Source of the DNA: Dendrobates tinctorius
Taxonomy: Eukaryota
Reading direction: 5' to 3'
Assembly (NCBI RefSeq): GCF_039654945.1
Contig: NW_027361743.1
Location: 9,238,001 to 9,302,000 of the forward strand
DNA: 64,000 nt
In this document: piece by piece, positions 1-46,424 of the stretch
How the letters are laid out: each line of letters starts with the position of its first letter
Numbering within the stretch: position 1 is the stretch's first letter
Made by a program: the position numbers and the translations under genes
The notes under the pieces: generated by a model
Told to the model about the DNA's origin: nothing
Seen by the model: the letters and a program-made list of their open reading frames with translations, nothing else
Database searches by the model: none

Positions 1-439
1 ACCAAGTGAGGATGGTAGGGATCACTGAATGATATTTTAGGAGAAGCATGGCTATCAATTTAAAGCTGTCTATATTTCCTGATCAGAGAACATTTATTCT
101 TGGTCTAGGATGGAGAGGACAGACATTTTGCCTGAACTTCAGTTGACAGCAGAGATCGCTTTACATCAGTCACTTGAAGGCAATAGACTGGATCTAGGAT
201 CCATCTTTCCGGCTCTTACAAGAGTTGCCTAGGAGTGTTCTGCAGGGAGAAGGAGGTGGTGGTGGTAACTACCGCAGATGGTGTACACTAACAATTATAC
301 GTTGGACTTACTCATCCTGAACACTAATGTGATCATAAATTAAGCAGGAGAAGGCGAAATTTGCCCATCCTTTGATACCCTTATATACTAGCTTTTCCAG
401 ATGGACAGACATTGATGCATGTTATATAGCAACACTCAC

Positions 440-536
440 AGGTTCTTTCTGGGCACGTCATCTCCTTTCTCACAGTTACTTTCTTTTCACCACTATTTCT
501 TGTGGTGAATCCGAGGGTCAATACATAATCAGTGTA
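440..536 (-). CDS. ZP4: ZP4/ZPB-like, coding exon 3 (end of ZP-N1); the gene continues beyond the left edge of the window
   Basis: Poly-T tract and ctttag acceptor, GTGAGT donor. Encodes YTDYVLTLGFTTRNSGEKKVTVRKEMTCPERT, resembling ZP4 DSHYIM...LLKCP. Phase 0 to 1. Confidence 0.8.
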
Positions 537-793
537 CTAAAGTGGAGAAAAAAAAAAAACAAAAAATTTACACTTGATGCCAGTAACTACCAAGACATCC
601 AACATTGAGGAAAGAGCAGTGCAAATAGCCCGAAGCAAGGCCATCTAATAATGCCATAGGTAATGTTCTCCCTACAGCTCGGTTTTGCCTTGATACAAGT
701 CCCAGCTTTAGCTTTCTGGCTCCATATGAAACTGAAGACACTTGGGAACCCATGATGGCTGCATAATGCCAGAGCACCACTTTATACGCTTAC

Positions 794-915
794 TTTTGGA
801 GAGATGTAGCAACCATCATAAGATGACCCAATGATCACAGAGCCATCGCTTCTCCTGTTCACCCAAATGCCGCAAGATGAATTATTTCTCAGAAGCTCCA
901 TTTTTCCATCTTTAT
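794..915 (-). CDS. ZP4: ZP4/ZPB-like, coding exon 2 (ZP-N1)
   Basis: Acceptor tttttcag and donor GTAAGC. Encodes (N)KDGKMELLRNNSSCGIWVNRRSDGSVIIGSSYDGCYISPK, resembling ZP4 LQNDSDCGTW...ATYSSCYV. Phase 1 to 0. Confidence 0.85.
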
Positions 916-1864
916 CTGAAAAACAGGGCATGGGTGAGCAAGAATAATCAGCACTCCACCAAGTGCCAGTGGTGTAGGTATATTGAATACATTCGCTGGA
1001 TGCAAACGCAGCCTTAGTACGAGAGGGGCCATGACATCTACTGCACGCACTGCTAGAAAGGCTTTGCACACAGGTGACTCAATGTGCCATTTTGTGCAGC
1101 TCCAAACCATCTGGTCACAAATGCTTGCATGTAGTCCAGAAGAAGAAAACCCCCACTCATTCACTATGGGACCACAATTCAGTTTCCACATCAAATTGAT
1201 AAATACCATTGGCTGATTCACAGGACTAAAGGCCAGCACCAACATAAGTAGTCAAAAAGCCTACCAGCATCCCCAAAGACTCAAGCTTAGTAGTCACAAA
1301 TGTCTTCTCCCCAGACAGTAGGAGTTCTACAGGGCTCTGGTCCAGAAGCCACAGACTACCAACATTGCCTCTGGAGCTAGGGCTTACAAATACTCTTATG
1401 CACAAGCCAGTCAGCATCACTGACTACTGTGCCCACCCCATCAATTATATGGCATTTATAGAAATATGCTCACCCCACCACCTCATCCTAAATATGTATA
1501 TAAATCTGTCCAACTAGCAATGGGTCATTCCTGACCAATAAGTCACAGACGGCTCCCTTAGTTATCAATGGTAGCCAGCACCCAAGTGAGCCATTTACAT
1601 TCTCAGAATGGCTCTCAATGAAGGAGAGAGGGTAAAACATACGACAAGGTCAAGGACACCAGAAGCCTACTTACTCTCCCTAGACAATGCTTTGATTCTA
1701 CCACACCATGCATGTGTTCATTAAATAAGAGCTCACTCTTTGGCAAGCAGAGCTAGGTGGTCCAGCTGCCCATGACTACAAAAGACTGAGCAGGCTCTTG
1801 GGGTCAGCATAAGTTGGTTGATCATAGGCCAATAACCATCATAAGGGATATTTTTAACACTTAC

Positions 1865-2027
1865 TTAAAATCTTCATCTTGTGGTCACCCTTCAGACTCA
1901 GTGGCACAACAATCTGCATGCTCTCCACCCCACATTGTATCTGTGGTGTCTCCTGCAGGCCATGGCTACTGTCCAAGCCCAACCATAGCAGCCAGCACAC
2001 TAGCCCCACCAGCCTTAACCACACCAT
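1865..2027 (-). CDS. ZP4: ZP4/ZPB-like zona pellucida (egg envelope) glycoprotein, coding exon 1 (signal peptide + start of ZP-N1)
   Basis: Manual translation of the minus strand: MVWLRLVGLVCWLLWLGLDSSHGLQETPQIQCGVESMQIVVPLSLKGDHKMKIL plus 1 nt, then GTAAGT donor at 1864-1859. Hydrophobic signal peptide and CG-x-x-S-M-Q motif resemble ZP4 exon 1; phase 1 matches the next exon. Confidence 0.8.
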
Positions 2028-2063
2028 CCTGAACCACTGACCACACCTAGCACCAGGAGCACC

Positions 2064-2089
2064 TATATAGTAATGTGATTGGCCACCTG
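2064..2089 (-). promoter_or_regulatory. Putative ZP4-like core promoter: TATA, CCAAT and E-box
   Basis: TATATA at 2064-2069, CCAAT (ATTGG at 2078-2082) and CACCTG/CAGGTG E-box at 2084-2089, all within ~65 bp upstream of the ATG at 2027. Confidence 0.55.
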
Positions 2090-2353
2090 GGCAGCTTTAA
2101 GTAACCCATTCATAGGCCCTGAGTCATCACATTGGGAAAATTCATTAGTGCGCTTGCACCTTTTTTTTTTGTCTAGTTTTTGATGTTTTTCATTTGCACC
2201 TTAGGCTACATTTCCATGATGAGTTTTTGGTGGATTTTTTGCGCTATGTGTTAAAAAAAAAAAAAAATCAAGTAACTTATTTCACTTAATGAGTGCAGAA
2301 AATCTGCAACATCAAAAAACTCACTCAAATCTCATTGAGAAAACGTAGCTTAA

Positions 2354-2609: not shown

Positions 2610-2640
<31 letters not shown>

Positions 2641-7466: not shown

Positions 7467-7538
7467 TTAGTGCGAGTGCAATGTGATTTTTTTTATCACA
7501 TTGCAGTTTGCGTATTTATACCTTAACCGAAACCTTTA

Positions 7539-15522: not shown

Positions 15523-15966
15523 TTAAGTCCAATAATCTGCAACCTCAAACAGGTAGTGGTAGATGTCGGTGCGCCGGGCGATCTCGTACGCAGTCTCTCC
15601 GAGCTTGTTGGTCAGTTGAGGTTTCACGTAGCGATTCATGAGGAGAAGCTCCAGCAGCTGCCGGCTGTCTCTGTTGGCGGCAGCCAAGTGCAGCGGCGTT
15701 AGCGAGCCCTTAGTCTGTGCGTTGATGTCTGCCCCGTGCTGAAGAAGGAAGGAGGCCACGGCCGGGTTATTCCACTTGCAGGCGCTGTGCAGCGGCGTCC
15801 ATCCGTCTAAGGTCACTGCGCAGAGGTTTGCCTCCTTGGCGATCAGCTCCCGCACGATCGACAGGTGACCGTTGTACGAGGCCCTGTGCAGGGGGGTGTA
15901 ATCATCTTCATCAGTGACATTCACCAGATCCGGGCTGATGGAAAGGATTCTCTGAATGGTGTCCAG
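15523..15966 (-). CDS. ANKRD49: Ankyrin repeat domain-containing protein 49, last coding exon
   Basis: ttcttcttacag acceptor; LDTIQRILS...TPLHRASYNGH...GWTPLHSACKWNN...TPLHLAAANRDS...IYHYLFEVADYWT*, matching vertebrate ANKRD49. Confidence 0.96.
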   Translation of the reverse strand: MDTIQRILSISPDLVNVTDEDDYTPLHRASYNGHLSIVRELIAKEANLCAVTLDGWTPLHSACKWNNPAVASFLLQHGADINAQTKGSLTPLHLAAANRDSRQLLELLLMNRYVKPQLTNKLGETAYEIARRTDIYHYLFEVADYWT

Positions 15967-16187
15967 CTGTAAGAAGAAAATAACCAGTGAGAAAACTGGG
16001 AAAAATAAAAAAAACAATGCACTCAGCACGTCAACATTCTCATAATAATGGAGAAAACTACAGATCAACTGTGGTCCCACGGCCAGTGCCCGCTCCGATC
16101 AGCAGAACAAGACGTTACCTACTTGGTGATGTCCCAGTGGTCGAATCATCACTGATCAATAAGTTATCAGCCATCCTAGAGCATATA

Positions 16188-17227
16188 CCGTACTTTTCAG
16201 ATTATAAGATGCACTTTTTTCCTCCAAAAATGTGGAGTAAAATGGGGGGTGCGTCTTATAGTCTGGATGTGTAGGCTGTGCTGAGGAGGTAGGGGAGCGG
16301 TTTTGGCGGAGGAGCAGCTGCTGCTGCTGCTAACTCCGGTGCCCACTGGTAAAGAGAAATGTATATTCACTGCATTCCACGCCCATGGGCATGGAGGGCA
16401 ATGAATATTCATTTCTCTTTAATGGCATCCTGATATGATTGGCCCCCTCCCCCATTCTGGTATGCATAGCCCCTTCAGAAAACAATAAAAAACCCCAACC
16501 ATTACACTTACCTTCCCGGCGCTCCTTCGCAGCGTCCTGCTCCAATGACAGCAGCTGCTTTATGCTTGTAAGCAGCGCATGGCAGGGACGTCATGCGCTG
16601 CTTGCAAGCCCAAGGGCAGCTGCCGGAATACTCAATACTCTGCACGTCGGGACTGTATGCGCGCAAAGCATTGAGTATTCATTGTTCTCTAGCGAGCAGT
16701 GTCAGCCGCAGCCTTCCTGCAGCTGCCGGCGGTCACATGTGCCAATACTTAAGAGAAATGAATATTCATGAAATGAGGTGAATATTCATTTCTCTTAAGT
16801 ATCGGCACATGTGACCGCCGGCAGCTGTAGGAAGTCTCCGGCTGACACTGTGCTCGCTAGAGAACAATGAATACTCAGTGCTTTGCGTGCATACAGTCCC
16901 TGCGTGCAGAGTACTGAGTATTCTGGCAGCTGCCCTGCGGCTTATAATCAGCACATGACGTCCCTGCCATGCGCTGCTTACAAGCATAAAGCAGTTGCTG
17001 GCAATGAACAGTGAGGGAGCACCAGGAAGGTAAGTGTAATTTTTTTTTTTTTTATGTTTTCTGATGGGGCCATGCATACCAGGATGGGGATGGAGGCCAA
17101 TCATACGACAGGATGGGACCATGTGTATGAGGATCGGAGATATTATGTACAGCATTGATCATATTTTTGCTTCCCCTTAATCTCCTCCTCTAAAACCTAG
17201 GTGCGTGTTATGGTCCGAAAAATACGT
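16188..17227. mobile_element. Tc2/pogo-like non-autonomous element with a long internal inverted repeat
   Basis: TA-CCGTACTTTTCAGATTATAAGATGCAC ... GTGCGTGTTATGGTCCGAAAAATACG ends; internal arms ~16501-16768 and ~16780-17040. Confidence 0.7.
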
Positions 17228-17301
17228 TAAGTGGTGGTGTCACCTCCTGAGCCCACCCCAAACATGTGGAACTGATGGTGGAGGTACGGTCATATCATAT
17301 T

Positions 17302-17562
17302 GGGCGGCACGGTGGCTCAGTGATCAGCACTGCAGCGCTGGGGTCCTGGGTTCAAATCCCACCAAGGACAACATCTGCAAGGAGTTTGTATGTTCTCCCC
17401 GTGTTTGCGTGGGTTTCCTCCGGGTTCTCCGGTTTCCTCCCACATTCCAAAGACATACTGATAGGGAATCTAGATTGTGAGCCCCATTGGGGACAGTGAT
17501 GATCATGTCTATAAAGCGCTGTGGAATTAATGCCGCTATATAACTGAGTAAAATAAATAAAT
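17302..17562 (+). mobile_element. tRNA-derived V-SINE with L2-like tail
   Basis: A box TGGCTCAGTG, B box GGTTCAAATCC, V-domain core GTTCTCCCCGTGTTTGCGTGGGTTTCCTCCGG, tail AAAGCGCTGTGGAA...AATAAATAAA. Confidence 0.85.
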
Positions 17563-17671
17563 ATGACAGGAAGGGGTTAAGTTGCGTTAAAACATTGCAT
17601 CAATGAATCTTTGATCAGCTACTGGGGGTTATATCCCAACCTGATCTTACTGCTCCATTGTGTGAACTTAC

Positions 17672-17968
17672 TCTGTTATTTTCTGCAGCAAAAAGCATTA
17701 ACTCTTTGGGGTTGTCCTTCAGAGCCTCCTCCTGACTCTGGTACCAATCCTCGCTCTTCTCCTCCTCGTCATCTTCTGACTCCCCCGGCCATAGACTCTG
17801 GGTCCCGGTAGGAATCAGGTGGCGGTGGGTTTCCAGTAGATCCAGTTGATTAAAGTCATCTGGAAAGTAGTCGAGTTTTTCTTGCAGATCAGTTTCGTCC
17901 TCTGTAGCAGTGTCGCCTGCGCCATTGTCCTGGGAGAAAGCGGCGTCCGTCTCCTGTAACGTCGTCAT
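17672..17968 (-). CDS. ANKRD49: ANKRD49, first coding exon
   Basis: gtcttccag acceptor followed immediately by ATG; MTTLQETD...FNQLDLLETHRHLIPTGTQSLW...WYQSQE...LFAAENNR then GTAAGT; phase 0 join to 15966 gives 246 aa. Confidence 0.93.
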
Positions 17969-18759
17969 CTGGAAGACACAAGACATCATGGCATGGCGCA
18001 AGAGGAAGCAAAAGGCGGGTGCGGCGCCACAAAAAGGGCGACACCAGCGGTCACAGGACCCCAGTGGTCAATACTGTGCTTTAGGACTGGCTTTCAGGGT
18101 GTTCGCATGTTTTTATGTCATCGTTGTTGGGGGGTGTTTTAGGTTTCTAGATGTTTTCTACCGATTAATTGGGGATTTTTATAGGAAGTCTTTATATTTC
18201 TGTGCAGATATCCCCCAGTCCCTCCTCCTCCCCTGGAGCGATTTTACCTGGGTCTCACATTTTCACAATATTTTCGTGCTGCAAAAAATTCATGAAGCGG
18301 GCCTGACATTTTGATAAAAATCTATAAAATTAACCCCCCCCCAAAGAATGACAAATTGGGTCCCCACTAATACTGGTAGCAGAGACCACCCCGAAGACGC
18401 GCTCCACTGCGGGTCACACGGCAGGACCGCTTTACGGTGCGACCAGCCTCTAACAGCAGCAACTGGAGCTACTCCACCTCCTGTCGCTGCTGTCTGGCCA
18501 CAGGTTAACCCCTGAAATGCTGCCACTAATCTCTGACAGCACCAATGTCCCAGTGGGGTCTGCCTAGGACCCTCCTTCCCGCCCCGCAGCCCCTGCTCTA
18601 TGGCCGGATACAGCGGTCTGCACTCACCTGTCACTGCCACAACTCCCAGTCTGCAGAGACTCCCTGCAGTAACCTGTTGGCTCCACGTCACCCCTCCCAC
18701 AATAACACCTGCTATCGATGCCTGTGCCCGGACCGCGGTCATGGACCACCCCTCCTCAC

Positions 18760-30650: not shown

Positions 30651-30783
30651 CGATGACGAGGACACGTTTAAGATCCTTGTGGCGACGGACATTCACCTCG
30701 GTTACATGGAAAAAGACGCCGTGAGAGGAAACGACAGTTTTGTGACTTTCGATGAGATACTGCGGTTCGCTCAGGATAATGAA
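30651..30783 (+). CDS. MRE11: MRE11 coding exon 2 (phosphoesterase motif I, DIHLG)
   Basis: ttactctcag acceptor; [44 protein letters not shown]; GTAAGT donor; 133 nt. Confidence 0.97.
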
Positions 30784-31289
30784 GTAAGTGTTGGGTAATT
30801 GGCTTTTCTTATGAATGGGACCCCCGCGGAGAAGCCGTCTCTCCTGTCACTGCTGTCAGCCATTATTGCTTTAGATAAAGAGAAGAGAGTCTGATACTCC
30901 AAGAACACAAGTGGCTCTCGCTTCATTATCTGTATAACGAGCTGTGATCCCGGCTGCCCGGACTAGCGAGTGGGAAGGATGTGAGACGGGAGATCATTTG
31001 ATTTTAGGTTGAAAATCCTCTTCTCATTCATTTCCTAATGTCTCAATGTACCGCGACGTAACAATACAACAGATGGAGTCTGAAATACTCATATGATAGA
31101 GTCTGATCATGGCTCTGCACAAGCAGCGGTAGAGGGATAATATCGGCGGGGCGAGTGTCTCTAAAGGTGGGGACTGGGCAATGACTTGATCTTTGGGACT
31201 TGGCATTAGCGTGGAAACATCCTGCAACTTAATTATGGTCACCAGGGCTGTCTCTTGTAAACATATGTTAAGGTATATGCCATAAGGGC

Positions 31290-31675
31290 GAGGGGTGCTG
31301 CATTTATGGGGTCAGATGAGCTGGGGTGCTGCAGTTATGGGGTCAGATTGGTTTGGGTGCTGCAGTTATGGTGTCAGATGACATGGGGTGTTTCAGTTAT
31401 GTGGTTAGATTGGAATGGATGCTGCAGTTATGTGGTCAGATGGGTTGAGTGCTGCATTTATGGGGTCGGGTCACATGGGCTGGGGTGTTGCATTTATGGG
31501 GTCAGATGGGCTGGGGTGCTGAAGTTATGGAGTTAGATGGGCTGGAGATGCTGCAGTTCTGGAGTCTTAGCTGGGGATGCTGCAGTTCTGGAGTCTTAGC
31601 TGGGGATGCTGCAGTTCTGGGGTCTTAGCTGGGGATGCTGCAGTACTGGGGTCTTTTCATCTGGGGATGCTGCTG
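31290..31675. repeat. ~30/28-bp minisatellite
   Basis: Unit ~CTGGGGTGCTGCAGTTATGGGGTCAGATGG. Confidence 0.85.
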
Positions 31676-32333
31676 TATCCCTGATGTGTAGTGGGTTGGT
31701 ATATACTGTGTGTTCCTGATGTGTAGTGGGTTGGTATTTGTACTCCTGGTGTGTAGTGGGTTGTATTTGTATCCCTGGTGTGTAGTGGGTTAGTATTTAT
31801 GTTCCTGGTGTGTGGTTTGTTGGTATTTGTACCGCTCGTGTGTAGTGGGTTGATATTTGTATCCCTGGTGTGTAGTAGGTTGGTATTTATACCCCTGGTG
31901 TTTAGTGGGTTGGTATTTATATTTCCTGTTGTGTAGTAGGTTAGTATTTATGTTCCTGGTGTGTAGTGGGTTGTATTTGTATCCCTGCTGTGTAGTGGGT
32001 TGTATTTGTATCCCTGCTATGTAGTGGGATAGTATTTATGTTCTTGGTGTGTAGTGGGTTGTATTTGTATCTCTGGTGTGTAGTGGGTTGTATTTTTATC
32101 TCTGGTGTGTAGTGGGTTGTATTTGTATCCCTGCTGTGTAGTGGGATAGTATTTATGTTCCTGGTGTGTAGTGGGATAGTAATTGTATCCCTGCTGTGTA
32201 GTGGGATAGTATTTATGTTCCTGGTGTGTAGTGGGTTAGTATTTATGTTCCTAGTGTGTAGTGGGTTGTATTTGTATCTCTGGGGTGTAGTGGGTTGTAT
32301 TTGTATCCCTGGTGTGTAGTGGGATAGTATTTA

Positions 32334-34009
32334 CAGCCATATGTTAAAGTTTGGGCACCCCTATTAATGTTAACCTTTTTTCTTTATAACAATTTTGGTT
32401 TTTGCAACAGCTATTTCAGTTTCATATATCTAATAACTGATGGACTCAGTAATATTTCTGGATTCAAATGAGGTTTATTGTACTAACAGAAAATGTGCAA
32501 TCTGCATTTAAACAAAATTTGACTGGTGCAAAAGTATGGGCACCCTTATCATTTTCTTGCTTTGAACACTCCTAACTACTTTTTACTGACTTCCTGAAGC
32601 ACTATATTGGTTTTGTAACCTCATTGAGCTTTGAACTTCATAGCCAGGTGTATCAAATCATGAGAAAAGGTATTTAAGGTGGCCACTTGCAAGTAGTTCT
32701 CCTATTTGATTCTCCTATGAAGAGTGGCATCATGGGCTCCTCAAAACAACTGTCAAATGATCTGAAAACAAAGATTATTCAACATAGCTTGTCAGGGGAA
32801 GGATACAAAAAGTTGTCTCAGAGATTTAACCTGTCAGTTTCCACTGTGGGGAACATAGTTAGGAAATGGAAGAACACAGGCACAGTTCTTGTTAAGCCCA
32901 GAAGTGGCAGGCCAAGAAAAATATCAGAAAGGCAGAGAAGAAGAATGGTGAGAACAGTCAAGGACAATCCACAGACCACCTCCAAAGACCTGCAGCATCA
33001 TCTTGCTGCAGATGGTGTCACTGTGCATCGGTCAACAATACAGCGCACTTTGCACCGGTCAACAATACAGCGCACTTTGCACAAGGAGAAGCTGTATGGG
33101 AGAGTGATGCGAAAGAAGCCGTTTCTGCAAGCACGCCACAAACAGAGTCGCCTGAGGTATGCAAAAGCACATTGGGACAAGCCAGTTACATTTTGGAAGA
33201 AGGTCCTGTGGACTGATGAAACAAAGATTGAGTTGTTTGGTCATACAAAAAGGCGTTATGCATGGAGGCTAGAAAACACAGCATTCCAAGAAAAACACTT
33301 GCTACCCACAGTAAAATTTGGTGGAGGTTCCATCATGCTTTGGGGCTGTGTGGCCAATGCTGGCACCAGGAATCTTGTTAAAGTTGAGGGTCGCATGGAT
33401 TCAACTCAGTATCAGCAGATTCTTGACAATAATGTGCAAGAATCAGTGACAAAGTTGAAGTTACGCAGGGGATGGATATTTCAGCAAGACAATGATCCAA
33501 AACACCGCTCCAAATCTACTCAGGCATTCATGCAGAGGAACAATTACAATGCTCTGGAATGGCCATCCCAGTCCCCAGACCTGAATATCATTGAACATCT
33601 GTGGGATGATTTGAAGCGGGCTGTCCATGCTCGGCGACCATCAAACTTAACTGAACTGGAATTGTTTTATAAACAGGAATGGTCACAAATACCTTCATCC
33701 AGGATCCAGGAACTCATTAATAGCTACAGGAAGCGACTAGAGGCTGTTATTTTTGCAAAAGGAGGATCTACGAAATATTAATGTCACTTTTATGTTGAGA
33801 TGCCCATACTTTTGCACCGGTCAAATTTTGTTTAAATGCAGATTGCACATTTTCTGTTAGTACAATAAACCTCATTTGAATCCAGAAATATAACTGAGTC
33901 CATCAGTTATTAGATATATGAAACTGAAATAGCTGTTGCAAAAACCAAAATTGTTATAAAGAAAAAAGGTTAACATTAATAGGGGTGCCCAAACTTTAAC
34001 ATATGACTG
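32334..34009 (+). mobile_element. Full-length Tc1 (IR/DR type) transposon
   Basis: TA TSD; ~210-bp near-identical TIRs (CAG(C/T)CATATGTTAAAGTTTGGGCACCCC...) with an inner direct repeat AAAGTATGGGCA. Confidence 0.96.
32732..33781 (+). CDS. Tc1 transposase (DD34E), 349 aa, uninterrupted
   Basis: Paired-like HTH, GRPRK, WTDETK, FQQDNDPKH and SPDLNIIE with 34 residues between the second D and E; likely start MGSSKQLS at 32732. Confidence 0.93.
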   Translation: MGSSKQLSNDLKTKIIQHSLSGEGYKKLSQRFNLSVSTVGNIVRKWKNTGTVLVKPRSGRPRKISERQRRRMVRTVKDNPQTTSKDLQHHLAADGVTVHRSTIQRTLHRSTIQRTLHKEKLYGRVMRKKPFLQARHKQSRLRYAKAHWDKPVTFWKKVLWTDETKIELFGHTKRRYAWRLENTAFQEKHLLPTVKFGGGSIMLWGCVANAGTRNLVKVEGRMDSTQYQQILDNNVQESVTKLKLRRGWIFQQDNDPKHRSKSTQAFMQRNNYNALEWPSQSPDLNIIEHLWDDLKRAVHARRPSNLTELELFYKQEWSQIPSSRIQELINSYRKRLEAVIFAKGGSTKY

Positions 34010-35277
34010 TATGTTCCTGGTGTGTAGTGGGATATTATTTGTATCCCTGGTGTGTAGTGGGATAGTATTTATGTTCCTGGTGTGTAGTGGGTTGTATTTG
34101 TATCTCTGGTGTGTAGTGGTTTGCACCCCATTTTATAGAATATGATGCAAAAAAAAATAAAACTTAATGAATACCACAAGTCAAAAAAAAGCGATTTAGA
34201 GAAAAAAAAATCCCATTTGATGACTTGAGCCCATTGATTTCACCGTGTAATGCTCTGAAAATAGGCAAAATAATTCCACAAAAAGCGATATGGTGAAAAA
34301 CACAAGTCATCGTTGGGTTCTTGATGCTCTGTATAATTACAATACCAAACTTACATCTTTCTTCCTTTGTTTTTTATTTTTTTAGATTTTAGTGATTAAA
34401 AAATTCTGGTTTGTGTCACCATTTTCGGGAATCCTTAAGTTATTTTAGTTCTGTTTCTCTGTTGATGGAGCTGGGTAAGGGCTTTTTTTTTTTTTTTTTT
34501 GCACAGCGAGCTGTAGTTTTTATTGTAACATTTTGGAGTACATATAATGTTTTGATCACATTTTGATTTTGTATTTATCTTTTTTCCGTACTTCATTTGC
34601 CAGTGCTGGACTTGGACTGAATTTCAACCAGGCCCATGCTGCCCCTCCATCCCCGTACACTCACTTCCCCACTTGGGGGTCTCTATTACAAATATTACCC
34701 TTCCTGACATTGCAGGAAATCAAGATTAGCTGCCAGACCAATTTTACCACTATATAAGGTGAAATAAAACTGCCACACTATGACTTGATAATAGTACCAT
34801 ATAGTGTCAGAATATTGCCATCATACTGATCCTAAAGGGGCTTCTCAACCCTGAGCACATTTTCAGCAGGCCGCGCAGCTTGTTGGGCCCTATCAGTGTG
34901 TAATATACACACCATTAGGATTTGGTTTCTCTTGCAAGATACAGTAGTCATGTGTCTGCCTGTATGCGATTTGTATACTTATGGTCACATGACGACTAGA
35001 TTATCAGTCACTCCGCTCACTGTTCTTTTGTGGTTGGTACGTGACGCATGCATATCACGTGTGGCAACCACTGGAACTGGTAACCAAACGTGATTCATAA
35101 TGGTGTGTATATTGCACACTGTTAAGATCCGGCAAGCTGTATGGCATGTCAAAAATTTATTTTAGGGGAGGATAATCTGTTTAGCAAACATGACTGTACA
35201 CAGACCTGTATTGGCATCAGTACTGTAATAAATAATACCGCCAGACCATAACCAAATAATACCAACGTATACAGTAA

Positions 35278-35915
35278 AGCTGGAGTCACACATAGCGACT
35301 TAACAGCGATCCCGACAACTATATCAATGTGTCAGGATCGCTGGTAAGTCGCTATTTGATCGCTGGTGAGCTGTCACACAGACAGCTTCACCAGTGATTA
35401 GGACGCCAAGGTGAGGAGCGAGCCCAGGGAGCAGCGGACAAGTGTGCCTGCTGTTCCAGTCCTCCACCAGCAGAGGGCGCGCCTGCATCCCCAGCCTCTC
35501 CTGGCGGCGTCCTGCTGCCTCCTGGTCCCCAGTGTGCGGTGGCGGCAGGTACACATTCCGCGGGCTCCTGGTCCCCAGCGTGAGGCGGCGGCGGCGGCAC
35601 CCGTAACTCGCTGGTAACTAACGTACACATCGGGTATCCAAGGGACGCCCGTCCCTTGGATACCCGATGTGTACGTTAGTTACCAGCTGATCGCTGGTCT
35701 CCCGCCTGTCACACGCAGCGATGCGTGCTGGCCAGCGGGAGATCAGTGACGAAAAAAATGTCCAGAGGTTTCTTGAAGCGATCAGCGATACCGGCAGGGG
35801 GCCGGTCGCTGATCGGTCACACACAGCGGTCTCGCTGGTGAGATTGCTGTTGTGTCACAAAACTTGTGACTCAGCAGCGATCTCGCTAGCGAGATTGCTG
35901 TGTGTGACGGGGCCC
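35278..35915. mobile_element. Harbinger-type MITE with a perfect internal hairpin (~35612-35685)
   Basis: AGCTGGAGTCACAC...GTGTGACGGGGCCC, TAA TSD. Confidence 0.75.
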
Positions 35916-36122
35916 TAAGGTGGTGCAAAGGGAGGGGATTATGATAAAGGAGATACAAGAGGCATCTTATTATATTTCTCCCTATTTTGCCTCCTTATTA
36001 TAAATCTCCCACAAAAGCAACCTTAGCCTGCCTGTGTAAGTGGTGGCGCAGGGAGCCAATGGCTTACTGCTCAGCTACAGTCGTTCACCTTTTCCTCTTC
36101 CACACATCTTGCTAGATCTTAA

Positions 36123-36493
36123 GGCTATGTGCACACGTTGCGGATTCTGCTGCGGATCCGCAGCAGTTTCTGGTGCATTGTACAGTAGCATTAAAGTAAA
36201 GGCAAAATGAAAGACGCTGTGCACATGCTGCATTTTTTTCCGCGCAGATTTGCTGCGGATTCAAAACTGCAGCATATCAATTCTTTTGTGCAGATCCTCT
36301 GCGTTTTGACACCTGCTCCATTATAGGAATCTGCAGGTGTCAAAACGCAGATGAAATCCGCACAAAAACTGCAGAAAATCCGCAGTAAATCTGCACTAAA
36401 TCCGCAGGTAAAATGCAGGTCATTTTACCTGCGGATTCAGCAAAATCTACGCAGAAAATTCCACAGCAGGATCCGCAATGTGTGCACATACCC
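36123..36493. mobile_element. Harbinger-type MITE
   Basis: GGCTATGTGCACAC...GTGTGCACATACCC, TAA TSD. Confidence 0.85.
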
Positions 36494-36520
36494 TAAAGGT
36501 GTGCAATATACACACCATTA

Positions 36521-36866
36521 GGGTATGTGCATACGGTGCGGATTCAGCTGCAGATCCCCAGCGGATTTTCCACTGCGGATCCGCTGCAGATCCGCAAGCA
36601 ATGTACAGTACAATGCTAATCAATGGATTGTAAAAACCGCAGTGCACACGCTGCAGATTTTTCCGTGTGGATTAGCTGTGGTTTTAAATCCGCAGCATGT
36701 CAATTCTTTCTGCGGATTCCGCAGCGGTTTGACACCTGTTCCATTGTACAGGTGTCAAATCTCAGGGGAAAACCGCAGGTAAAACGTAGGTCATTTTACC
36801 TGCGTATTTACCTGCAAATCCGCGCAGAGAAATCCGCAGCACAATCTGCGCCGTGTGCACTCACCC
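36521..36866. mobile_element. Harbinger-type MITE
   Basis: GGGTATGTGCATACGG...CCGTGTGCACTCACCC, TTA TSD. Confidence 0.8.
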
Positions 36867-39811
36867 TTACGATTCAGGTTTGGTTACCAGTTCCAGTATG
36901 ATATGCATGTGTCACGTACCGACCACAAAAGAACAGTGAGCGGAGTGACTGATAATCTAGTTGTCATGTGACCATAAGTATACAAATCGCATACAGGCAG
37001 ACACATGACTACTGTATCTGGCAAGAGAAACCAAATCCTAATGGTGTGTATATTACACACTGATAGGGCCCAACAAGCTGCGCGGCCTGCTGAAAATGTG
37101 CTCAGGGGTGAGAAGCCCCTTTGGGATCAGTATGATGGCAATATTCTGTCACTATATGGTGCTATTATGAAGTCACAGTGTGGCAGTATTATTTCACCTT
37201 ATATAGTGGTGAAATCAGTAAATCTTATACACAAACACACACATATATATCTAATGATGTCTCCTGTGAATCCCAGCCTATGACAAGCAATGGAAAGGTT
37301 AAATTGTTTTTCGCAGGCCTCAGGGCTTACATATGTGGCCTTAATTCTAATTAATGGCTACGAGGCTTGTAGCGGCACAGTCGCCTGTACTTAGGACTCA
37401 GGGTTATTTCCTGTTTGGAGAGTGATATGTTCCCGATCTCTGCACCTTTGCTCGTTGCCATGTACATATGTCTTACAAAGCTTTTAGTGTCATCTTTCAC
37501 ATCTTGCATCTTCACTGTGATGAATCTTAATGGACTCTTGTAATGTCCGATGAAGATGAAGCCTCCCGCCTGAGGAGGTCACGCTTTATATTCTGCCTCC
37601 ACTTGTCAGACCCCTCGAGCAGAGCTCGGTGATGTATCTAAGGGCCCCATGTAGTGTCTGCATTAGGCCGTTGCATTTACAGGGAAACATTTTTCCTTAA
37701 GATGTTATGATCCGTCATCTACGGCATTTTTTTTCTGGACCGTCTCCTCCCCTGTGTTTTTTTTTTTTATGAAAAATTCTCTCTGTGATTTACAAGCTTT
37801 TTATTCAGTTTTTCTGGGTTTATTTTCATGTTTTTTATCAAAACTACTAGGCCTCGTTTCGTCTATGTTGCCCATAGCAACCAATCACAGCTCAGCTTTC
37901 ATTTTGTAAACAGGGCTAGAAAAAAGAAAGTTGCGCTGTGATTGGTTGTTATGGGCAATAGACACAAGTTTCTATTTTAAGCCAATTTAATGCTCTTTAT
38001 ACAGGGGAGGAAACCCCTTTGTAAGGGTGAATTGTGAATTGGCGTCCTGTCGACCTGAGGCTGGTGTCTCCGTGGCGTTAGCCCTGGAAAGCTTTGAAGC
38101 CTATGGTTGAGCTTCACAGGCATACCAAGATGGCAATGAAGGGAACTTTTAAACTGTGTGCCCACAGCAGTTTCAGAAACGCTTAAAAAACGCTAATAAA
38201 ATGTATCCCCATGCAATCGGATTCCGCAGTTGCTGTGCCCATGCTGCAGATTTTTCCGCTGAGGAATCGCATGACGATAAATCCGCAGCATGTCCATTAT
38301 TTCTGCGGAATTGTGGCGATTCCGTCGCCATAGGATTGCATTGAAACGCTCACTTTACGCATGTGGCTATGCCCACCATGCGTGAAGTGAGCGCTTCATG
38401 TGCGGATGGTACCCAGGGTCTGGAGGAGAGGAGACTACATGCCCTGGGTACCATAATCCTGTTAAAAATAATAATAAAAAAAAAAATATATACTTACTAT
38501 TCCTGTAAAAAATAGAATTAAAATAAAAAATAGGGTCAGCCCCCGGAATCCTCCCAACCCTCATGGCACTGCCGGCAACTTCATCAGAGGTCATTAGCGC
38601 AATGCATCCCTGGGAACGGAAGTTGCCACCAGCGCCGATGAGGGCTCCAGGGGCGAAAGAGGGTAAGTATATCCCTATATTTTAATATTTTTTTTTTTTT
38701 ATTACTTTTAACATTCTGTCTTTTACTATTGATGCTGCATAGGCATCAGCCCGGACTACCTCTTCATGTTCAATTGGTGCCAGTGACCCCCAGCGCTGAT
38801 TGTGCGCCGTTGTCACGTGTCACCACAATCTCACTGGAGCCCTGGGACCGCTAGTGCTGACGCCGCTGAACGGTGACAGTAGGTGAGTATAGGCTTTATT
38901 AATTTTTGAGGGCCAAACGTATTAATCAAGAAGTAGTTGTCCTAATAGTGGACAACCCCTTTAAGCATATGAAATGCTGCTCGATGGGGATAAAATCTGG
39001 TGATTTTTTTTCATTTTCTTTTTTCCCTTTCCATGTTTAAAGAGCTACAACTTATTTCTCCCTCACTATATCTGTATCAGAGCTTGTTTTTTGCTGGAGG
39101 AGTTGTTCTTTTGAATGACACCATTCATTTTACCACAGTGTACTGGAAAATGAGAAAAAAAATTCCAAGTAAGATGAACTTGCAAAAAAGTTCAATTCCA
39201 CAATAGTTTTTTTTAAAATTAATTTATCATGTTCCAGGTCATTACGATTACGCAGATACCAAACATGTATATATTTTTTTTTAAGTGGTGAAAAAAATAC
39301 TGAAATTTGTAAGAAACATATTTTTTGCTTTTGTCGTTATTTTCTGAGATCCTTAACGTTCTTACTTTTGGGATCTGGGGCTGCGTGAGGACTTACTTTT
39401 TGCGCCCTGAGCTGACTTTTTCATCAATACTATTTTGGGATAGATACGATGTTTTGATCGCCTCTTATTACATTTTATTGCAATGTTGCGATTGTAAAAA
39501 AAAACACGTAATTCTGGAATTTTTTGTTACTCGTTACAACACTTTCCTATTGAATTAATTTACTTTGTATTTTGATAGATCAGACATTTCTGAACTTAGC
39601 GATACGAAATATGTGTATGTTTTAGTTTATTTTTTATTGTTTTATTTTCAATGGGGCAAAGGGGGTATGATTTGAACGTTTGTTTATTTTTTTCAATATT
39701 ATTATTTTGTTTCCTTTGCACTGTATTTAATAGTCCTCTTAGGGGACTTGAAGCTGCAGTCATCGGATTGCGTGTGCTATACATAGCAGTGCATCAGCAC
39801 TTCTATGTATA

Positions 39812-40431
39812 AAGGAGCAACCGGAAAAACAGTGCATAGACATCCAAGATAAATAGAAATCACATAAATCTTTTACAGACACAGATAAAAGTTGGCATGA
39901 CAGGAGTGACACAAGGTAAGCGCACAGAGGTACATAGCATCCCTACGGTATATCAATATGGTAAAATGTATCTCTATATATAATGTACACAGGCCGACCA
40001 GTCATAACAGCGTAAAGGGTAAAGTCACCAGACCGTCGGGCAACCCAAAAAGGGGTACAGAAAATCAAAATACAGACATAGTACTCATACCTAAACGGGA
40101 CACTAGACCACTGGCGCAAGGAAAACAGCCCAACGTACGTTTCGGAAGCAAAACCGCTTCCTTCCTCAGGGGGTGTGAGGGACTGGGGACTTGTGTCACT
40201 CCTGTCATGCCAACTTTTATCTGTGTCTGTAATAAAGATTTATGGGATTTCTATTTATCTTGGATGTCTATGCACTGTTTTTCCGGTTGCTCCTTTATAT
40301 ATTATAGTCAGTGTATCCTATTTTTGAACTGTGTTGGGCTTAAAAAACATGATTATTTGGATTTTTACTAAATTGAATCTAAACCATATATACCTACTTT
40401 TTAGCCCTATGCACTGTCAATATTGTTGCTT
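39812..40431 (-). mobile_element. Short non-coding Penelope-like / retrozyme-like element with inverted ends and a hammerhead motif
   Basis: 13-bp TSD ACTTCTATGTATA (39799-811, 40432-444); ~108-bp inverted arms at 39808-39915 and 40190-40299; hammerhead motif at 40125-40176. Confidence 0.8.
40125..40176 (-). ncRNA. Minimal type I hammerhead ribozyme motif
   Basis: Minus strand: ACACCCC-CUGAGGA-A-GGAAGC-GGUUUU-GCUUCC-GAAA-CGUACG-UU-GGGCUGU. Intact core, 6-bp stem II, palindromic stem III, stem I with 6 of 7 pairs. Confidence 0.75.
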
Positions 40432-40742
40432 ACTTCTATGTATAGCAGAAATCACAATCTCCTATGAGTACAGGGACACAATGACAGGCACGGGGGTCAT
40501 CAGCAAACCGCTGATTATCAGGACAACCCACCAGTGCTCAGCGTTCACGTATCAGGTAGGTCGATGGCAGCGTGGAATGACCCGCACCCTGCCGTGCCTG
40601 TTGAATAGATTTAATAGGTTGACAGTCGCAGGCGGAGTTTTCATGGGCCGGAGAAAGATGTGGGCTTAGCGTGCGAGCCCGCATCAAAGGTAGGGACATG
40701 ATGTATGACGTAAATGTACATCATATGTTGTGAAGGGGTTAA

Positions 40743-41700
40743 AAAACTTGTGATTTGTTTTCACAGTATGTTTTGGGTCATTGTCCATCTGTACTGTGAA
40801 GCCGCCTTGCTGTATTTGGTTGAATCTTGCCCTGTACAATTCTTGATTCATCTGGCTGCTTCTGTTGAGTCACACCATCAGTAAACACTAGTGACCCAGT
40901 GCCATTGGAAGCCATGCATGCCCGTCGCATTACACCGCCTCCACCATGTGTTACAGAGGATTTGATGTGCTTTGGATCATGAGCCATTCCAAGAATTCTC
41001 CATATTTTCTTCTTCCCATTATTCTGGTACAGGTTGATATTAGTTTTATCTGTCCATAGAACGCTTTTCCTGAACTGGCTGGCTTTTCTATTTTTATGGC
41101 TGATCAATGGTTTTCACCTTGCTGTGAACCCTCTGTATTTGCTCTCATGAAGTCTTCTCTTTATGGTAGACTTAGATACTGAAACAACTACTTTCTGGAG
41201 AGTGTTCTTCACTTGGATGAATAATGTGAAGGGTTTTTCTTCACCATGGAAAGGATTCTGCATTCTTCCACCACTGTTGTCTTCTGTGGACGTCCAGAGC
41301 TGTTTGAGTTCCCTAGCTCACCAGAGCGAAATTTTTTTTTTGCGGAATGTACCAAACTGTTCATTTTGCCATTCCTAACATTTATGTTATGTCTCTGATG
41401 GATTGCTTCTATTTTTTCAGCCTGATGATGGTCTGTTTCTCTTCCATTGAGAGCTTCTTTGACCGCATGTTGTGGGTTCACAGCAGCAGCTTTCAAGCAC
41501 ATGTGCCACACCTGGAATCAGCCCTATCTGCTTAATTGATGGTGGATTAATGCAACAAAATCCCATGCAGCCCATCAAAGGCTTTTTAGATATGTCCAAT
41601 CTTCACTTTAAGCCCATATTGATTGTTATTGATTTGAATATGTTTTGGTGGACAGTTAAAATGCCAAAACTAGTGTCACTGTTGAAATATTTCTGGACCT
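40743..41700 (-). mobile_element. Decayed Tc1-like transposase
   Basis: Fragmented ORFs with GRPQKTT...ILSMVKKNP, VLWTDKTNINLYQN and HGGGGVM..ACMASNGTGSLVF. Confidence 0.8.
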
Positions 41701-43449
41701 AACCTTTTCATTGAATCTTATCTATGGAGTTACATAGGACTGCAGGTAACTATCTACATTATCTGTGCTCAGAGAGTTATCTCTGTGTTATCTGTCATGT
41801 TATATTTTAGGATATTGGAGGGAGGTGGGGAAGCGTTCTGAGTCCCTGATCTTCTCCGTCCCTGCTCCCATCCCACGATTGCTATGCACTGAGCTGACAA
41901 GGAGAAGCGTCTTTATTGCACCCCGCACCTTTCTCCATCTCAACTGGTGGCAATGTCGGATTGGGATGGCGGGGGCCCACCAGTAACCAACGCCTGGGTC
42001 CCTCTTTTCAACTACATGCAAATGTGACATTATCCTCAATAAAAAAATGTATATAACAATGGACTAGATAGTTTGTTACATGACTAAGATGCCACCTTTG
42101 TACATAGTGAATCAATATATTGTGCCAAGTACTGCTCAGATAAGAAGATGATGTTCTACAGGGGCCCACCGGAGAATTCTCCTGTCCTCCTGTGGGCCAG
42201 TCCAAGCCTGGTCACATTAATTAGATTTTGGAAAACTTCTCGTTTGGCAACCTGCAAGAAACATATCTGTAGCTACGTCGTCCTCGCCTTGTTGCTCAGA
42301 TTTTTTGCCATATACGCAGCTATTGACAACTCAATTAGGCTCAGAGAAGAACGAGGCAAACCTGATTTTAGAGAGGTAAAAAGACAACCGGTGAGAAAGG
42401 GAATAAACACTAGTACAGGTGGCATATAGATGGCACGCGCAATGGACGCTTTCTTCTCTGATTTCTCTGGATTGTCCGTTTCATCCCCAAAGTAAAAAGC
42501 ACAAACTAATTTACTTTTCTTTTTACTCTCGTTTAATTGCGTTTTCAGCTGCGCAGCAATTTCATGGGACTTTTTATTGAATATAAATAAGTATTTTCCG
42601 TCCTGTAATTATAGCCACTTTCCGTCCCGAGCGCGAGACGAGGAGATGAATAGATGAGGCTTGTTTGTATTGCATTGTGCGAAAATTACCTACGGTATTA
42701 GTTTTTTCTTTCTTGTTCCTCCCGCATTGCTTACCTAATCACAGAGGTTTCTTTGACCTACTGTGACTTTCCAAAAAGCTGTGCACATTAATATTTCATC
42801 TGAGAACCTCTTGCGGTGTGTGTGTAATTTAACTTGCTGGATTCTGTCAGCAAATCTAGCGGCCTGAAGATTCCGTCTATCAGATTTTCACACTTTTATG
42901 TATTAGATGATGAGATTTTGCTGTGATTTTTTTTCATTGCCTTTGGTGGACGCAGCATGGAGTAACTTTTTTCTTACTTTAAAGGAAACCTGCCAGCTTG
43001 CCCAGGTCCCCCAAGGATTCATCATGTATTACTATGGAGTGCCATATCTAACAAGCGCTTTTTATTGACCCACACCACCTCTGCCCCCCTGGACACGTAT
43101 GCTGCGCCCGGCTTACTGCACGCTGTCGGGGATGCAGAGATTTGCAAAGATCTAGCAGTGACACCGCTCTTGCACATCTTGTTACTCGCACCCACAGAGG
43201 CGTGATAACATAATTAATGGGATGACAACTTTGGGGAAATAATGCCCCCACAATTAGTTATTCACAAATTAACATATCGCCGCCAAAGTTATAAAATAGT
43301 TTTTGCAATATGCAGTAATCCTAGACAATAAAAAGTGCCTGTTGGGTACAGTATTCACATAGTAATAAATACCGTACATGGGGGGCAGTTTGAGGGACCC
43401 GGGGCAAGATGAAAGTCTGCAAATCACTTAATTTACAAACTTTGTTGTC

Positions 43450-43915
43450 TTACCTCCTCCTCCTGTACAATGACTGATAACCCCTCTATATACAGTACAT
43501 AACACAGGATCCACCATTCACAATAGGTGATGTCACAGCTCACCTCCTCCTGTACAATGACTGATAACACCTCTGTTTATAGTATATAACATAGGATCCA
43601 CCATTCACAATAGGTGCTGTCACAGCTCACCACCTCCTCCTGTACAATGACTGATAACACCTATATATACAGTAGATAACACAGGATTCACAATTCGCAA
43701 TAGGTGATGTCACAGCTCACCTCCTCCTCCTCTTGTACAATGACTAATAAGACCTCTATATACAGTAGATAACCCAGGATCCACCATTCACAATAGGTGA
43801 TGTCACAGCTCACCTCCTCCTGCTGTACAATGACTGATAACACCTTTATACACAGTATATAACATAGGATCCACCATTCACAATAAGTTTTGTCACAGCT
43901 CACCTCCTCCTCTTC
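43450..43915. repeat. ~87-93-bp tandem repeat, ~5 copies
   Basis: TGTACAATGA recurs at 43464, 43551, 43641, 43734 and 43824. Confidence 0.9.
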
Positions 43916-44177
43916 CCTCACATTGACCTTTATGAAATTAAAAAAGTACATTTACCATAAAACCTTGATTTTACCAATATGCAATCATCTGATGACACTT
44001 GGAATTTAAAGGAACTTGTCACAGTGTTTTCAATAATATAACTAAAGAAATGAACTGGAGTATAAGTTGGTGTGCATGCAGCATGTAAGCGCATGTTCAC
44101 ACTGGCCACTAAACAGACAAAACTCAACATAGAAACATAATAAGCAAATACCCTGCAGTAAATGAATAAACAGCAAT

Positions 44178-44820
44178 AGATCACAGACTGAATATGAGTC
44201 AACAGTGTGATGCAGCAGCAAAAAAAGGCAAATGCAATTCTAGGATGTATTAACAAGCATATAGTCTAGATCACGTAAAGTCATTATTGCCCTCTACTCC
44301 TCTTTGGTCAGACCTCATCTGGAATACTGTGTCCAGTTTTGGGCGCCAAATTTTAAAAAAGACATCAACAAACTGGAGCAAGTTCAGAAAAGAGCGACCA
44401 GAATGGTGACCGGTCTGCAAACCCTGTCTTATGAGGAAAGGTTGTAGGATTTGGGAATGTTTAGCTTGCAGAAGAGAAGACTGAGCTGAGACTTAATAGC
44501 TGTCTACAAATATCTCAAGGGCTGTCACATTGTAGAAGGATCAACTTTATTCTCATTTGCACAAGGAATGACTAGGAACAATGGGATGAAACTGAATGTG
44601 ATCAGACACAGATTAGATATTAGGAAAAACTTTTTGACAGAGTGATCAATGAGTGGAACAGGCTGCCATGAGAGGTGGTGAGTTCTCCTTCAATAGAAGT
44701 CTTCAAACAGAGGCTGGACAGACATCTGACTGGGATGATTTAGCGAATCCTGCTTTGAGCAGGAGGTTGGACCAGATGGCCCAGGAGGTCCCTTCCAACT
44801 CTACCATTCTATGATTCTAT
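44178..44820 (+). mobile_element. 5'-truncated CR1 LINE inserted in a foldback element (~44100-45385)
   Basis: DHRLNMSQQCDAAAKKANAILGCI...[13 protein letters not shown] remnants; CCATTCTATGATTCTAT end; flanks are inverted repeats. Confidence 0.88.
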
Positions 44821-46263: not shown

Positions 46264-46424
46264 GTTGATTTTGTGCTGCTCGGGGGAGATCTATTCCACG
46301 ATAACAAACCTTCCCGAAAAACTCTACATACGTGTATGGAGCTGCTCAGGAAGTACTGCATGGGAGACCGGCCGGTCCAGTTTGAGGTCATCAGTGATCA
46401 ATCTGTGAATTTTAGCTATAGCAA
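46264..46424 (+). CDS. MRE11: MRE11 coding exon 3 (motif II, GGDLFH)
   Basis: ttttctctag acceptor; [53 protein letters not shown](K); GTAAGT donor; 161 nt. Absent from the ORF track. Confidence 0.97.

What the first reader, a model, noticed from the sequence alone, without database searches (positions are those of the whole stretch)
440..2027. Hidden ZP4/ZPB-like egg-coat gene next to ANKRD49
Seen: three phase-compatible exons (2027-1865, 915-794, 536-440) encode a signal peptide and an N-terminal ZP-N domain with four cysteines (QCG, SCG, GCY, TCP) and an N-glycosylation sequon (NNSS). The ORF track shows only exon 2 inside a longer ORF. Known: in mammals ZP4 lies beside RYR2, not beside ANKRD49/MRE11, and ZP1-N1 has an additional cross-linking cysteine that is absent here. 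Inference: a divergent amphibian ZP4 paralogue at a non-mammalian syntenic position, of interest for fertilisation-protein evolution.
Basis: partly seen in the sequence, partly recalled or inferred. Interest (0 to 1): 0.7.

Follow-up and report, generated by a model that had tools for sequence, protein, structure and literature searches.

The report
Frog ZP4-like egg-coat gene start
The three exons are real and form the start of an intact egg-coat (zona pellucida ZP4-type) gene of the dyeing poison frog, but public annotation already lists this gene with the same exons, so it is an ordinary known gene and not a hidden one.

Summary
Observation confirmed. Minus-strand exons 2027-1865, 915-794 and 536-440 have standard GT/AG borders and compatible phases. 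They encode a signal peptide and a four-cysteine ZP-N1 domain.

- **Family match:** exon 2 alone hits Pfam ZP1_ZP4_Ig-like above its cutoff, and its best solved structure is chicken ZP1-N1.
- **Already annotated:** all three exons are 100% identical to residues 1-127 of RefSeq XP_073439075.1, [quoted passage not shown]. The window is 100% identical to that assembly.
- **Complete gene:** the trefoil exon lies 1.14 kb beyond the window's left edge. The ZP module, furin site and transmembrane helix follow.
- **ZP4 type, not ZP1:** the domain lacks the ZP1 cross-linking cysteine and both ZP1 histidines. Trees place all sampled amphibian copies on the ZP4 side, though AU tests are marginal.
- **Synteny:** the order MRE11 / ANKRD49 / ZP4-like also occurs in Spea and Bufo, so the position is frog-wide. 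Mammalian ZP4 lies beside RYR2.

Frogs carry several old ZP4-like lineages at three or more loci, and this gene is the copy next to ANKRD49. The scan's earlier notes held nothing on this gene. Novelty: already known. Interest: low.

The parts
1865..2027 (-). Exon 1 of the ZP4-like gene. It holds the ATG, the signal peptide (about residues 1-23) and the first strands of ZP-N1, including Cys32 (codon 1934-1932). It ends in phase 1 at donor GTAAGT.
   Evidence: 100% identical to residues 1-54 of XP_073439075.1 (P0134) by tblastn. The called gene range starts at this ATG (L003 10001 = window 2027).
794..915 (-). Exon 2, the core of ZP-N1. It holds the sequons Asn65/Asn66 (886-881), Cys69 (874-872) and Cys90 (811-809).
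   Evidence: Pfam PF22821, E 2.9e-10, 41 bits. Best PDB match is chicken ZP1-N1 6GF6, E 0.0047. Residues 56-95 of P0134 are identical.
440..536 (-). Exon 3, the last strands of ZP-N1 with Cys123 (455-453). It ends in phase 1 at donor GTGAGT.
   Evidence: 100% identical to residues 96-127 of P0134. It has no Pfam or PDB hit on its own.
1..439 (-). First 439 nt of intron 3. The next exon (trefoil domain, residues 128-176) lies about 1.14 kb beyond the window's left edge.
   Evidence: All three frames of this stretch contain stop codons. Exon 4 maps to L003 13167-13312, and window position 1 equals L003 12027.
2063..2115 (-). Putative core promoter: a conserved block CTATGAATGGGTTA (2115-2102), E-box CAGGTG (2089-2084), CCAAT (2082-2078) and TATATAG (2069-2063). 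The TATA box starts 42 nt before the ATG, which implies a very short 5' UTR.
   Evidence: Read. The TATA box, the E-box and the upstream block align with Ranitomeya, two Bufo copies and partly Lithobates. Their function is inferred, not shown.
15526..17986 (-). Neighbouring gene ANKRD49, with two coding exons (17986-17663 and 15969-15526). It is on the same strand, and its 3' end is 13.5 kb upstream of the ZP4-like ATG.
   Evidence: Ankyrin Pfam hits. 97% identical to Phyllobates and Ranitomeya ANKRD49. tblastn coordinates.
30694..53270 (+). MRE11 exons, head-to-head with ANKRD49. Motif-bearing exons lie near 30.69 kb, 46.27 kb and 53.25 kb.
   Evidence: A six-frame motif scan found the DIHLGY, LGGDLFH and GNHDDP exons. 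In Spea and Mixophyes the gene beside ANKRD49 carries the Metallophos and Mre11_DNA_bind domains.

Best explanation
Window 2027-440 (minus strand) is the promoter-proximal end, exons 1-3 of about 12, of an intact ZP4-type zona pellucida gene of Dendrobates tinctorius. NCBI already models it as XP_073439075.1, 549 aa.

The precursor has this order of parts:
- signal peptide
- ZP-N1 Ig-like domain, with predicted disulfides C32-C123 and C69-C90 and one glycosylated loop at NNSS
- trefoil domain
- ZP module (ZP-N and ZP-C)
- furin site RRKR at 450-453
- transmembrane helix at 499-520

By analogy with characterised ZP subunits, the protein is probably made in the growing oocyte and trafficked as a membrane-anchored precursor. 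It would then be cut at the furin site and built through its ZP module into filaments of the vitelline envelope. The free N-terminal ZP-N1 would project from the filament.

Because ZP-N1 lacks the ZP1 cross-linking cysteine and the ZP1 histidines, it most likely acts as a ZP4-type subunit that does not form covalent cross-links.

What is shown: the gene structure, its identity to the annotated protein, the domain content and fold, and the conserved synteny. What is inferred: oocyte expression, processing and incorporation into the egg coat.
For: - **Exons and splice sites:**
- **Family match:** Pfam PF22821 on exon 2 alone, and a PDB sequence hit to chicken ZP1-N1.
- **Identity to the annotated protein:** 100% identity of the three exons to P0134 = XP_073439075.1. 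Window 1-12027 equals L003 12027-1 at 100%.
- **Complete gene:** P0134 carries ZP1_ZP4_Ig-like at 32-124, Trefoil at 137-174, ZP-N at 181-279 and ZP-C at 303-448. It also has RRKR at 450 and a transmembrane helix at 499-520. The remaining exons map downstream in the same contig.
- **Fold:** the AlphaFold2 model of residues 24-130 has pLDDT 89.6 and pTM 0.80. Its best Foldseek hits are chicken ZP1 ZP-N1 6GF6/6GF7 (E about 1e-6, TM 0.69-0.70), followed by the ZP-N domains of ZP2, uromodulin and ZP3.
- **ZP4 signature:** NxS-x-CGxW and GCY here, against NCSIC-HW and GCH in six amniote ZP1 proteins. The roles of the ZP1 residues come from PMC6626044.
- **Trees:** amniote ZP1 separates (100), and all amphibian copies fall with amniote ZP4 (SH-aLRT 98, 95).
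- **Conservation:** orthologues exist in at least 12 neobatrachian species plus Spea. The TATA and E-box promoter is conserved. The ANKRD49-ZP4-like order is shared with Bufo and Spea.
Against: - There is no expression or protein evidence here. The RefSeq model is a computed prediction.
- The tree-based assignment to ZP4 is not strong. Forcing amniote ZP1 and all amphibian rows into one clade costs only 9.2 lnL, with p-AU 0.029. Forcing ZP1 with this gene's clade alone gives p-AU 0.093.
- All trees used the quick search mode, and none included a Xenopus sequence.
- Feng et al. 2018 (PMC6262864) report a small Xenopus clade that groups with ZP1.
- Exons 1 and 3 have no Pfam or PDB hit on their own.
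Confidence: 0.9

Rival explanations
1. The gene is the frog orthologue of ZP1, the filament cross-linker, and not a ZP4-type subunit.
For: The best solved-structure match by sequence and by fold is chicken ZP1-N1, but no ZP4-N1 chain appeared among the matches in either PDB search, so ZP4 was not compared. Feng et al. 2018 describe a Xenopus clade that groups with ZP1. The AU test of this clade plus ZP1 is not rejected (p 0.093).
Against: The cross-link cysteine that defines ZP1 (chicken C66) and the histidines H71 and H91 are Asn, Ile and Tyr here. All six amniote ZP1 proteins aligned keep them. Two trees place every amphibian copy on the ZP4 side (SH-aLRT 98 and 95). ZP1 plus all amphibians as one clade gives p-AU 0.029. 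The long linker that makes the ZP1 proteins found here 609-1,227 aa is absent, since this protein is 549 aa.
Confidence: 0.07
2. The three exons are a dead 5' fragment or pseudogene left beside ANKRD49, with no working gene behind them.
For: The window ends inside intron 3, so nothing downstream can be seen in the window itself. No expression data are available.
Against: The same contig continues with all remaining exons. Together they give an uninterrupted 549-aa protein with every expected domain, a furin site and a transmembrane helix. Full-length protein models of the same clade are annotated in at least 12 other frog species, and the same exon pattern maps in Ranitomeya. The promoter block is conserved.
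Confidence: 0.02
3. The domain is an N-terminal ZP-N repeat of a ZP2- or ZPAX-type gene and not of a ZP1/ZP4-type gene.
For: ZP2 N-terminal domains are the next-best structural matches.
Against: The Pfam hit is specific to the ZP1/ZP4 Ig-like family. A trefoil domain follows directly, and only one N-terminal ZP-N is present. Every sequence relative with a ZP subunit name is named ZP4 or ZP1.
Confidence: 0.01

Closest known systems
Amniote ZP4 (ZPB), e.g. chicken ZP4 (P0041) and mammalian ZP4
   Same: The architecture is the same: signal peptide, ZP-N1, trefoil, ZP module, furin site and transmembrane helix. The ZP-N1 signature is the same: a glycosylated NxS loop followed by CGxW, then GCY, with no extra cysteine. 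The trees place the frog gene on the same side as amniote ZP4.
   Different: The Lithobates member of this gene's clade is 37-48% identical to amniote ZP4, and the ZP-N1 of this gene is about 22-29% identical. The frog gene belongs to an amphibian-only expansion, so it is a co-orthologue and not a one-to-one orthologue. It lies next to ANKRD49 and MRE11, whereas human ZP4 lies with RYR2 and CHRM3 at 1q43.
Chicken ZP1 ZP-N1 domain (PDB 6GF6/6GF7/6GF8; PMC6626044)
   Same: It is the best structural and sequence match among solved structures (TM 0.69-0.70, 27% identity). The four cysteines sit at almost the same residue numbers: 32, 69, 90 and 123 here, against 32, 69, 90 and 124 in chicken. The glycosylation sequon is in the same loop.
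   Different: It lacks C66, which makes the intermolecular disulfide, and it lacks the zinc-binding H71 and H91. It is therefore not expected to cross-link filaments covalently.
Other frog ZP4-like lineages, e.g. D. tinctorius XP_073440492 (P0139) and Rana temporaria XP_040200990 (P0090)
   Same: They have the same four-domain architecture and fall in the same amphibian clade in the trees.
   Different: They belong to different, old lineages. In Spea they sit at other loci: one tandem pair lies between a VEGFR-like and an amino-acid-permease gene, and another lies beside a CDC50-family gene. The N1 domain is only 22-28% identical.

Membership tests
ZP1/ZP4 subfamily of egg-coat ZP proteins | An N-terminal ZP-N1 (Ig-like) domain with four conserved cysteines | tested here: met
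   PF22821 on exon 2 alone scores 41 bits against a cutoff of 28, and 78 bits on the full protein. The cysteines are invariant or nearly so across 36 sequences. The AlphaFold2 model matches 6GF6.
ZP1/ZP4 subfamily of egg-coat ZP proteins | A trefoil (P-type) domain between ZP-N1 and the ZP module | tested here: met
   PF00088 at residues 137-174 of P0134, 25 bits against a cutoff of 21. The exon lies at L003 13167-13312, outside the window.
ZP1/ZP4 subfamily of egg-coat ZP proteins | A ZP module (ZP-N plus ZP-C), then a furin site and a C-terminal transmembrane helix | tested here: met
   PF23344 at 181-279 and PF00100 at 303-448. RRKR at 450-453 and a hydrophobic helix at 499-520. All of these lie outside the window, on the same contig.
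ZP1 (cross-linking subunit) | An extra cysteine in the cd loop (chicken C66, inside the NCS sequon) that forms the intermolecular disulfide, plus H71 and H91 | tested here: not met
   These positions are Asn, Ile and Tyr here (alignments; residue roles from PMC6626044).
ZP4 (orthology group) | Groups with amniote ZP4, apart from ZP1, in a phylogeny | tested here: inconclusive
   The ZP4 side is favoured, with SH-aLRT 98 and 95. The AU tests are marginal, at p 0.029 and p 0.093. All searches were in quick mode and no Xenopus sequence was included.
ZP4 (orthology group) | Shared synteny with mammalian ZP4 (RYR2-ZP4-CHRM3) | tested here: not met
   The neighbours here are ANKRD49 and MRE11, as in Spea and Bufo. 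The human arrangement is taken from PMC4705475.
Egg-coat component (functional class) | Expressed in the oocyte or ovary and present in the vitelline envelope | not testable with these tools
   No RNA-seq or proteomics data were available. The only indirect support is a conserved TATA and E-box promoter.

The most novel reading that the evidence does not exclude
Frogs may carry an old, largely undescribed expansion of ZP4 co-orthologues, with about five lineages at three or more loci. On this reading, the copy next to ANKRD49 and MRE11 heads an ancestral tandem array. Spea has a second ZP1/4 gene directly behind it. In Discoglossus, fused gene models hold four different lineages on the ANKRD49 chromosome. 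This lineage was found in every neobatrachian family that appeared in the searches here, and it may have a specialised role such as species-specific sperm binding. None of the papers my four ZP-related full-text searches returned describes the ANKRD49 linkage.
Probability: 0.5. Interest if true: 0.35.

Novelty: already known. Interest (0 to 1): 0.12.

Why it matters
For this gene, very little changes. The wider pattern is of modest use to people who study the evolution of fertilisation proteins. Frogs keep several ancient ZP4-type genes at different loci, one of them in a stable MRE11-ANKRD49-ZP4-like arrangement. No ZP1-type cross-linker signature appeared in any amphibian copy I aligned. That raises the question of how frog egg-coat filaments are cross-linked.

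Tried and rejected
- **Exons 1 and 3 alone:** neither gave a Pfam or PDB hit. They were identified only through the full-length proteins.
- **Exon 4 inside window 1-439:** rejected. The one good acceptor, near 241, gives an in-frame stop. The real exon lies 1.14 kb outside the window.
- **Joined product:** The exons were searched one at a time by reference. The full protein was handled only as the database entry P0134.
- **Bacterial promoter and terminator scan:** irrelevant to a vertebrate gene.
- **Failed look-ups:** The look-up of encoding contigs had nothing on record for Ranitomeya and Discoglossus ANKRD49. One look-up failed on a queue and was repeated.
- **Caecilian ZP4 locus:** no neighbours appeared within 10 kb, so synteny outside frogs stays open.
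- **Mixophyes:** no ZP gene lies within 10 kb after ANKRD49, although a ZP4-like gene is on a contig of identical length, probably the same chromosome.
- **Frog clade B at the mammalian ZP4 locus:** not supported. In Spea this pair lies between a VEGFR-like gene and an amino-acid-permease gene.
- **Earlier scan notes:** they held nothing on this gene.
- **Human sequence:** no contig that I took for human was fetched, saved or compared.

Full report
**1. The observation**

- Exon 1 is 2027-1865. It starts at an ATG, ends at donor GTAAGT and leaves phase 1.
- Exon 2 is 915-794. Its acceptor is TTTTTCAG and its donor is GTAAGC, and it ends in phase 0.
- Exon 3 is 536-440. A long T tract and TTTAG precede it, the donor is GTGAGT, and it leaves phase 1.

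The translations give a hydrophobic signal peptide and then a domain with four cysteines in the contexts QCG, SCG, GCY and TCP, plus the sequon NNSS. Exon 2 lies in frame inside the 95-aa ORF 782..1069. Exon 1 lies in a 57-aa ORF. This explains why an ORF track with a cutoff near the tool's default of 60 aa shows only exon 2. The window contains no N.

**2. What it is**

I never assembled or searched the joined 127-aa product.

- Exon 2 alone hits Pfam PF22821 (ZP1_ZP4_Ig-like), E 2.9e-10, 41 bits against a cutoff of 28.
- Its best solved-structure match is chicken ZP1-N1, 6GF6 (E 0.0047).
- Exons 1 and 3 gave nothing on their own.
- A search of 1.84 billion representative proteins with exon 2 gave 14 hits. 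I scanned nine of them, and all carry the ZP1/ZP4 Ig-like domain; eight of the nine come from frogs.

Using the Lithobates hit as a seed returned 236 relatives. The 90%-identity cluster of the Ranitomeya protein contains XP_073439075.1, [quoted passage not shown], 549 aa (P0134).

tblastn shows that residues 1-54, 56-95 and 96-127 of P0134 are 100% identical to the three exons. Residue 55 is the split codon. The gene's contig, GCA_039654945.1 JAYMGB010000019.1, matches window 1-12027 at 100%.

**3. The rest of the gene**

P0134 carries ZP1_ZP4_Ig-like at 32-124, Trefoil at 137-174, ZP-N at 181-279 and ZP-C at 303-448. It also has a furin site RRKR at 450-453 and a transmembrane helix at 499-520.

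Its remaining exons map downstream on the same contig. The trefoil exon starts about 1.14 kb beyond the window's left edge. Window 1-439 is therefore intron 3.

**4. Fold and subtype**

An AlphaFold2 model of residues 24-130, built from a 36-sequence alignment, is confident (pLDDT 89.6, pTM 0.80). Foldseek ranks chicken ZP1 ZP-N1 first (E about 1e-6, TM 0.69-0.70). The ZP-N domains of ZP2, uromodulin and ZP3 follow.

Nishimura et al. (PMC6626044) define the ZP1 cross-link by an extra cysteine, C66, inside an NCS sequon, and by H71 and H91. In the alignments all six amniote ZP1 proteins read NCSIC-HW and GCH. This gene, every other amphibian copy and amniote ZP4 read NxS-x-CGxW and GCY or GCF.

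**5. Phylogeny**

I built three quick-mode maximum-likelihood trees.
- The gene falls in a well-supported clade A, made of Neobatrachia, one Spea gene and the first half of a fused Discoglossus model. Support is 99-100.
- With ZP1 included, amniote ZP1 forms its own clade (100).
- Amniote ZP4 and all amphibian copies fall on the other side (SH-aLRT 98 under LG+G4, 95 under PMSF).
- The amphibian copies form one clade (96-98) with at least five frog lineages.

The tests are not decisive. Forcing ZP1 and all amphibian rows together costs 9.2 lnL, p-AU 0.029. Forcing ZP1 with clade A alone gives p-AU 0.093. No Xenopus sequence was in the trees, and Feng et al. 2018 report a Xenopus clade that groups with ZP1.

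My reading is that this gene is a ZP4 co-orthologue. That rests on the residue signature together with the trees, and I put it at about 85-90%.

**6. Synteny**

- ANKRD49 lies on the same strand, with coding exons 17986-17663 and 15969-15526. MRE11 exons lie on the plus strand at about 30.7, 46.3 and 53.3 kb.
- In Spea bombifrons the order is MRE11(-), ANKRD49(+), clade-A ZP4-like(+), then a second ZP1/4 gene, all within 25 kb.
- In Bufo bufo, ANKRD49 is followed 6 kb later by a ZP4-like gene. The ANKRD49-ZP4-like unit appears to be duplicated there.
- The other Spea lineages lie elsewhere.
- Human ZP4 lies with RYR2 and CHRM3 at 1q43 (PMC4705475).

The position is therefore non-mammalian and frog-wide. 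A full-text search found no paper that mentions ANKRD49, MRE11 and the zona pellucida together.

**7. Promoter (inferred)**

A TATA box (2069-2063) starts 42 nt before the ATG. An adjacent CCAAT box, an E-box CAGGTG (2089-2084) and an upstream block (2115-2102) are also present. The TATA box, the E-box and the upstream block align with Ranitomeya, both Bufo copies and partly Lithobates.

From my own knowledge, E-boxes bound by FIGLA and very short 5' UTRs are typical of mammalian ZP genes. That is a lead, not a test.

**8. Verdict**

The thing itself is an ordinary gene that is already annotated. What I could not test is expression. The scan's earlier notes held nothing on this gene. I fetched and compared no human contig.

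Noticed in passing
L005 (Bufo bufo LR991669.1, about 663.80 Mb) and L004 (about 663.49 Mb): Bufo bufo has three ANKRD49-like proteins and at least three clade-A ZP4-like genes on one chromosome. One ANKRD49 copy lies 6 kb before a ZP4-like gene. This looks like a segmental duplication of the ANKRD49-ZP4-like unit.
   Followed up: partly
P0001, P0143, P0144 (Discoglossus pictus) and P0142 (Pelobates cultripes): These gene models of about 1,000 aa each contain two complete ZP4-like proteins in tandem. They are probably annotation fusions of neighbouring genes. The halves of P0143 and P0144 fall in four different lineages on the ANKRD49 chromosome.
   Followed up: partly
L007, L008, L010 (Spea bombifrons): Spea has three tandem pairs of ZP1/4 genes at three loci: beside ANKRD49 and MRE11, between a VEGFR-like gene and an amino-acid-permease gene, and beside a CDC50-family gene.
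   Followed up: partly
all amphibian rows of alignment A2: No amphibian ZP1/4 copy in the alignment has the ZP1 cross-link cysteine or the two ZP1 histidines. Either frogs lack a ZP1-type cross-linker or it was not sampled here.
   Followed up: partly
window 32687-33781 (+): An uninterrupted 364-aa Tc1/mariner-type transposase ORF (the HTH_Tnp_Tc3_2, DDE_3 and Sleeping Beauty HTH domains) lies inside an MRE11 intron.
   Followed up: no
window 9322-10377 (-), 20299-20988 (+), 55906-56499 (-): ORF fragments that look retrotransposon-derived: the first two have reverse-transcriptase Pfam hits (the second only weakly), the third has none. The first lies between ANKRD49 and the ZP4-like gene and helps stretch that spacer to 13.5 kb, against 2.5-6 kb in Spea and Bufo.
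   Followed up: no
window 26500-27618: Two adjoining minisatellites, 52 bp x 10.8 copies and about 30 bp x 19 copies. They create long spurious ORFs on both strands between the ANKRD49/MRE11 promoter region and the first coding exon of MRE11.
   Followed up: partly
window 39812-40431: An earlier scan note (s1-381474) describes a 620-bp non-coding mobile element with a hammerhead ribozyme here. I did not examine it.
   Followed up: no
window 2102-2115 (-): A 14-nt block, CTATGAATGGGTTA, just upstream of the E-box is conserved between the dendrobatid, Bufo and Lithobates promoters. Which factor binds it is unknown.
   Followed up: no
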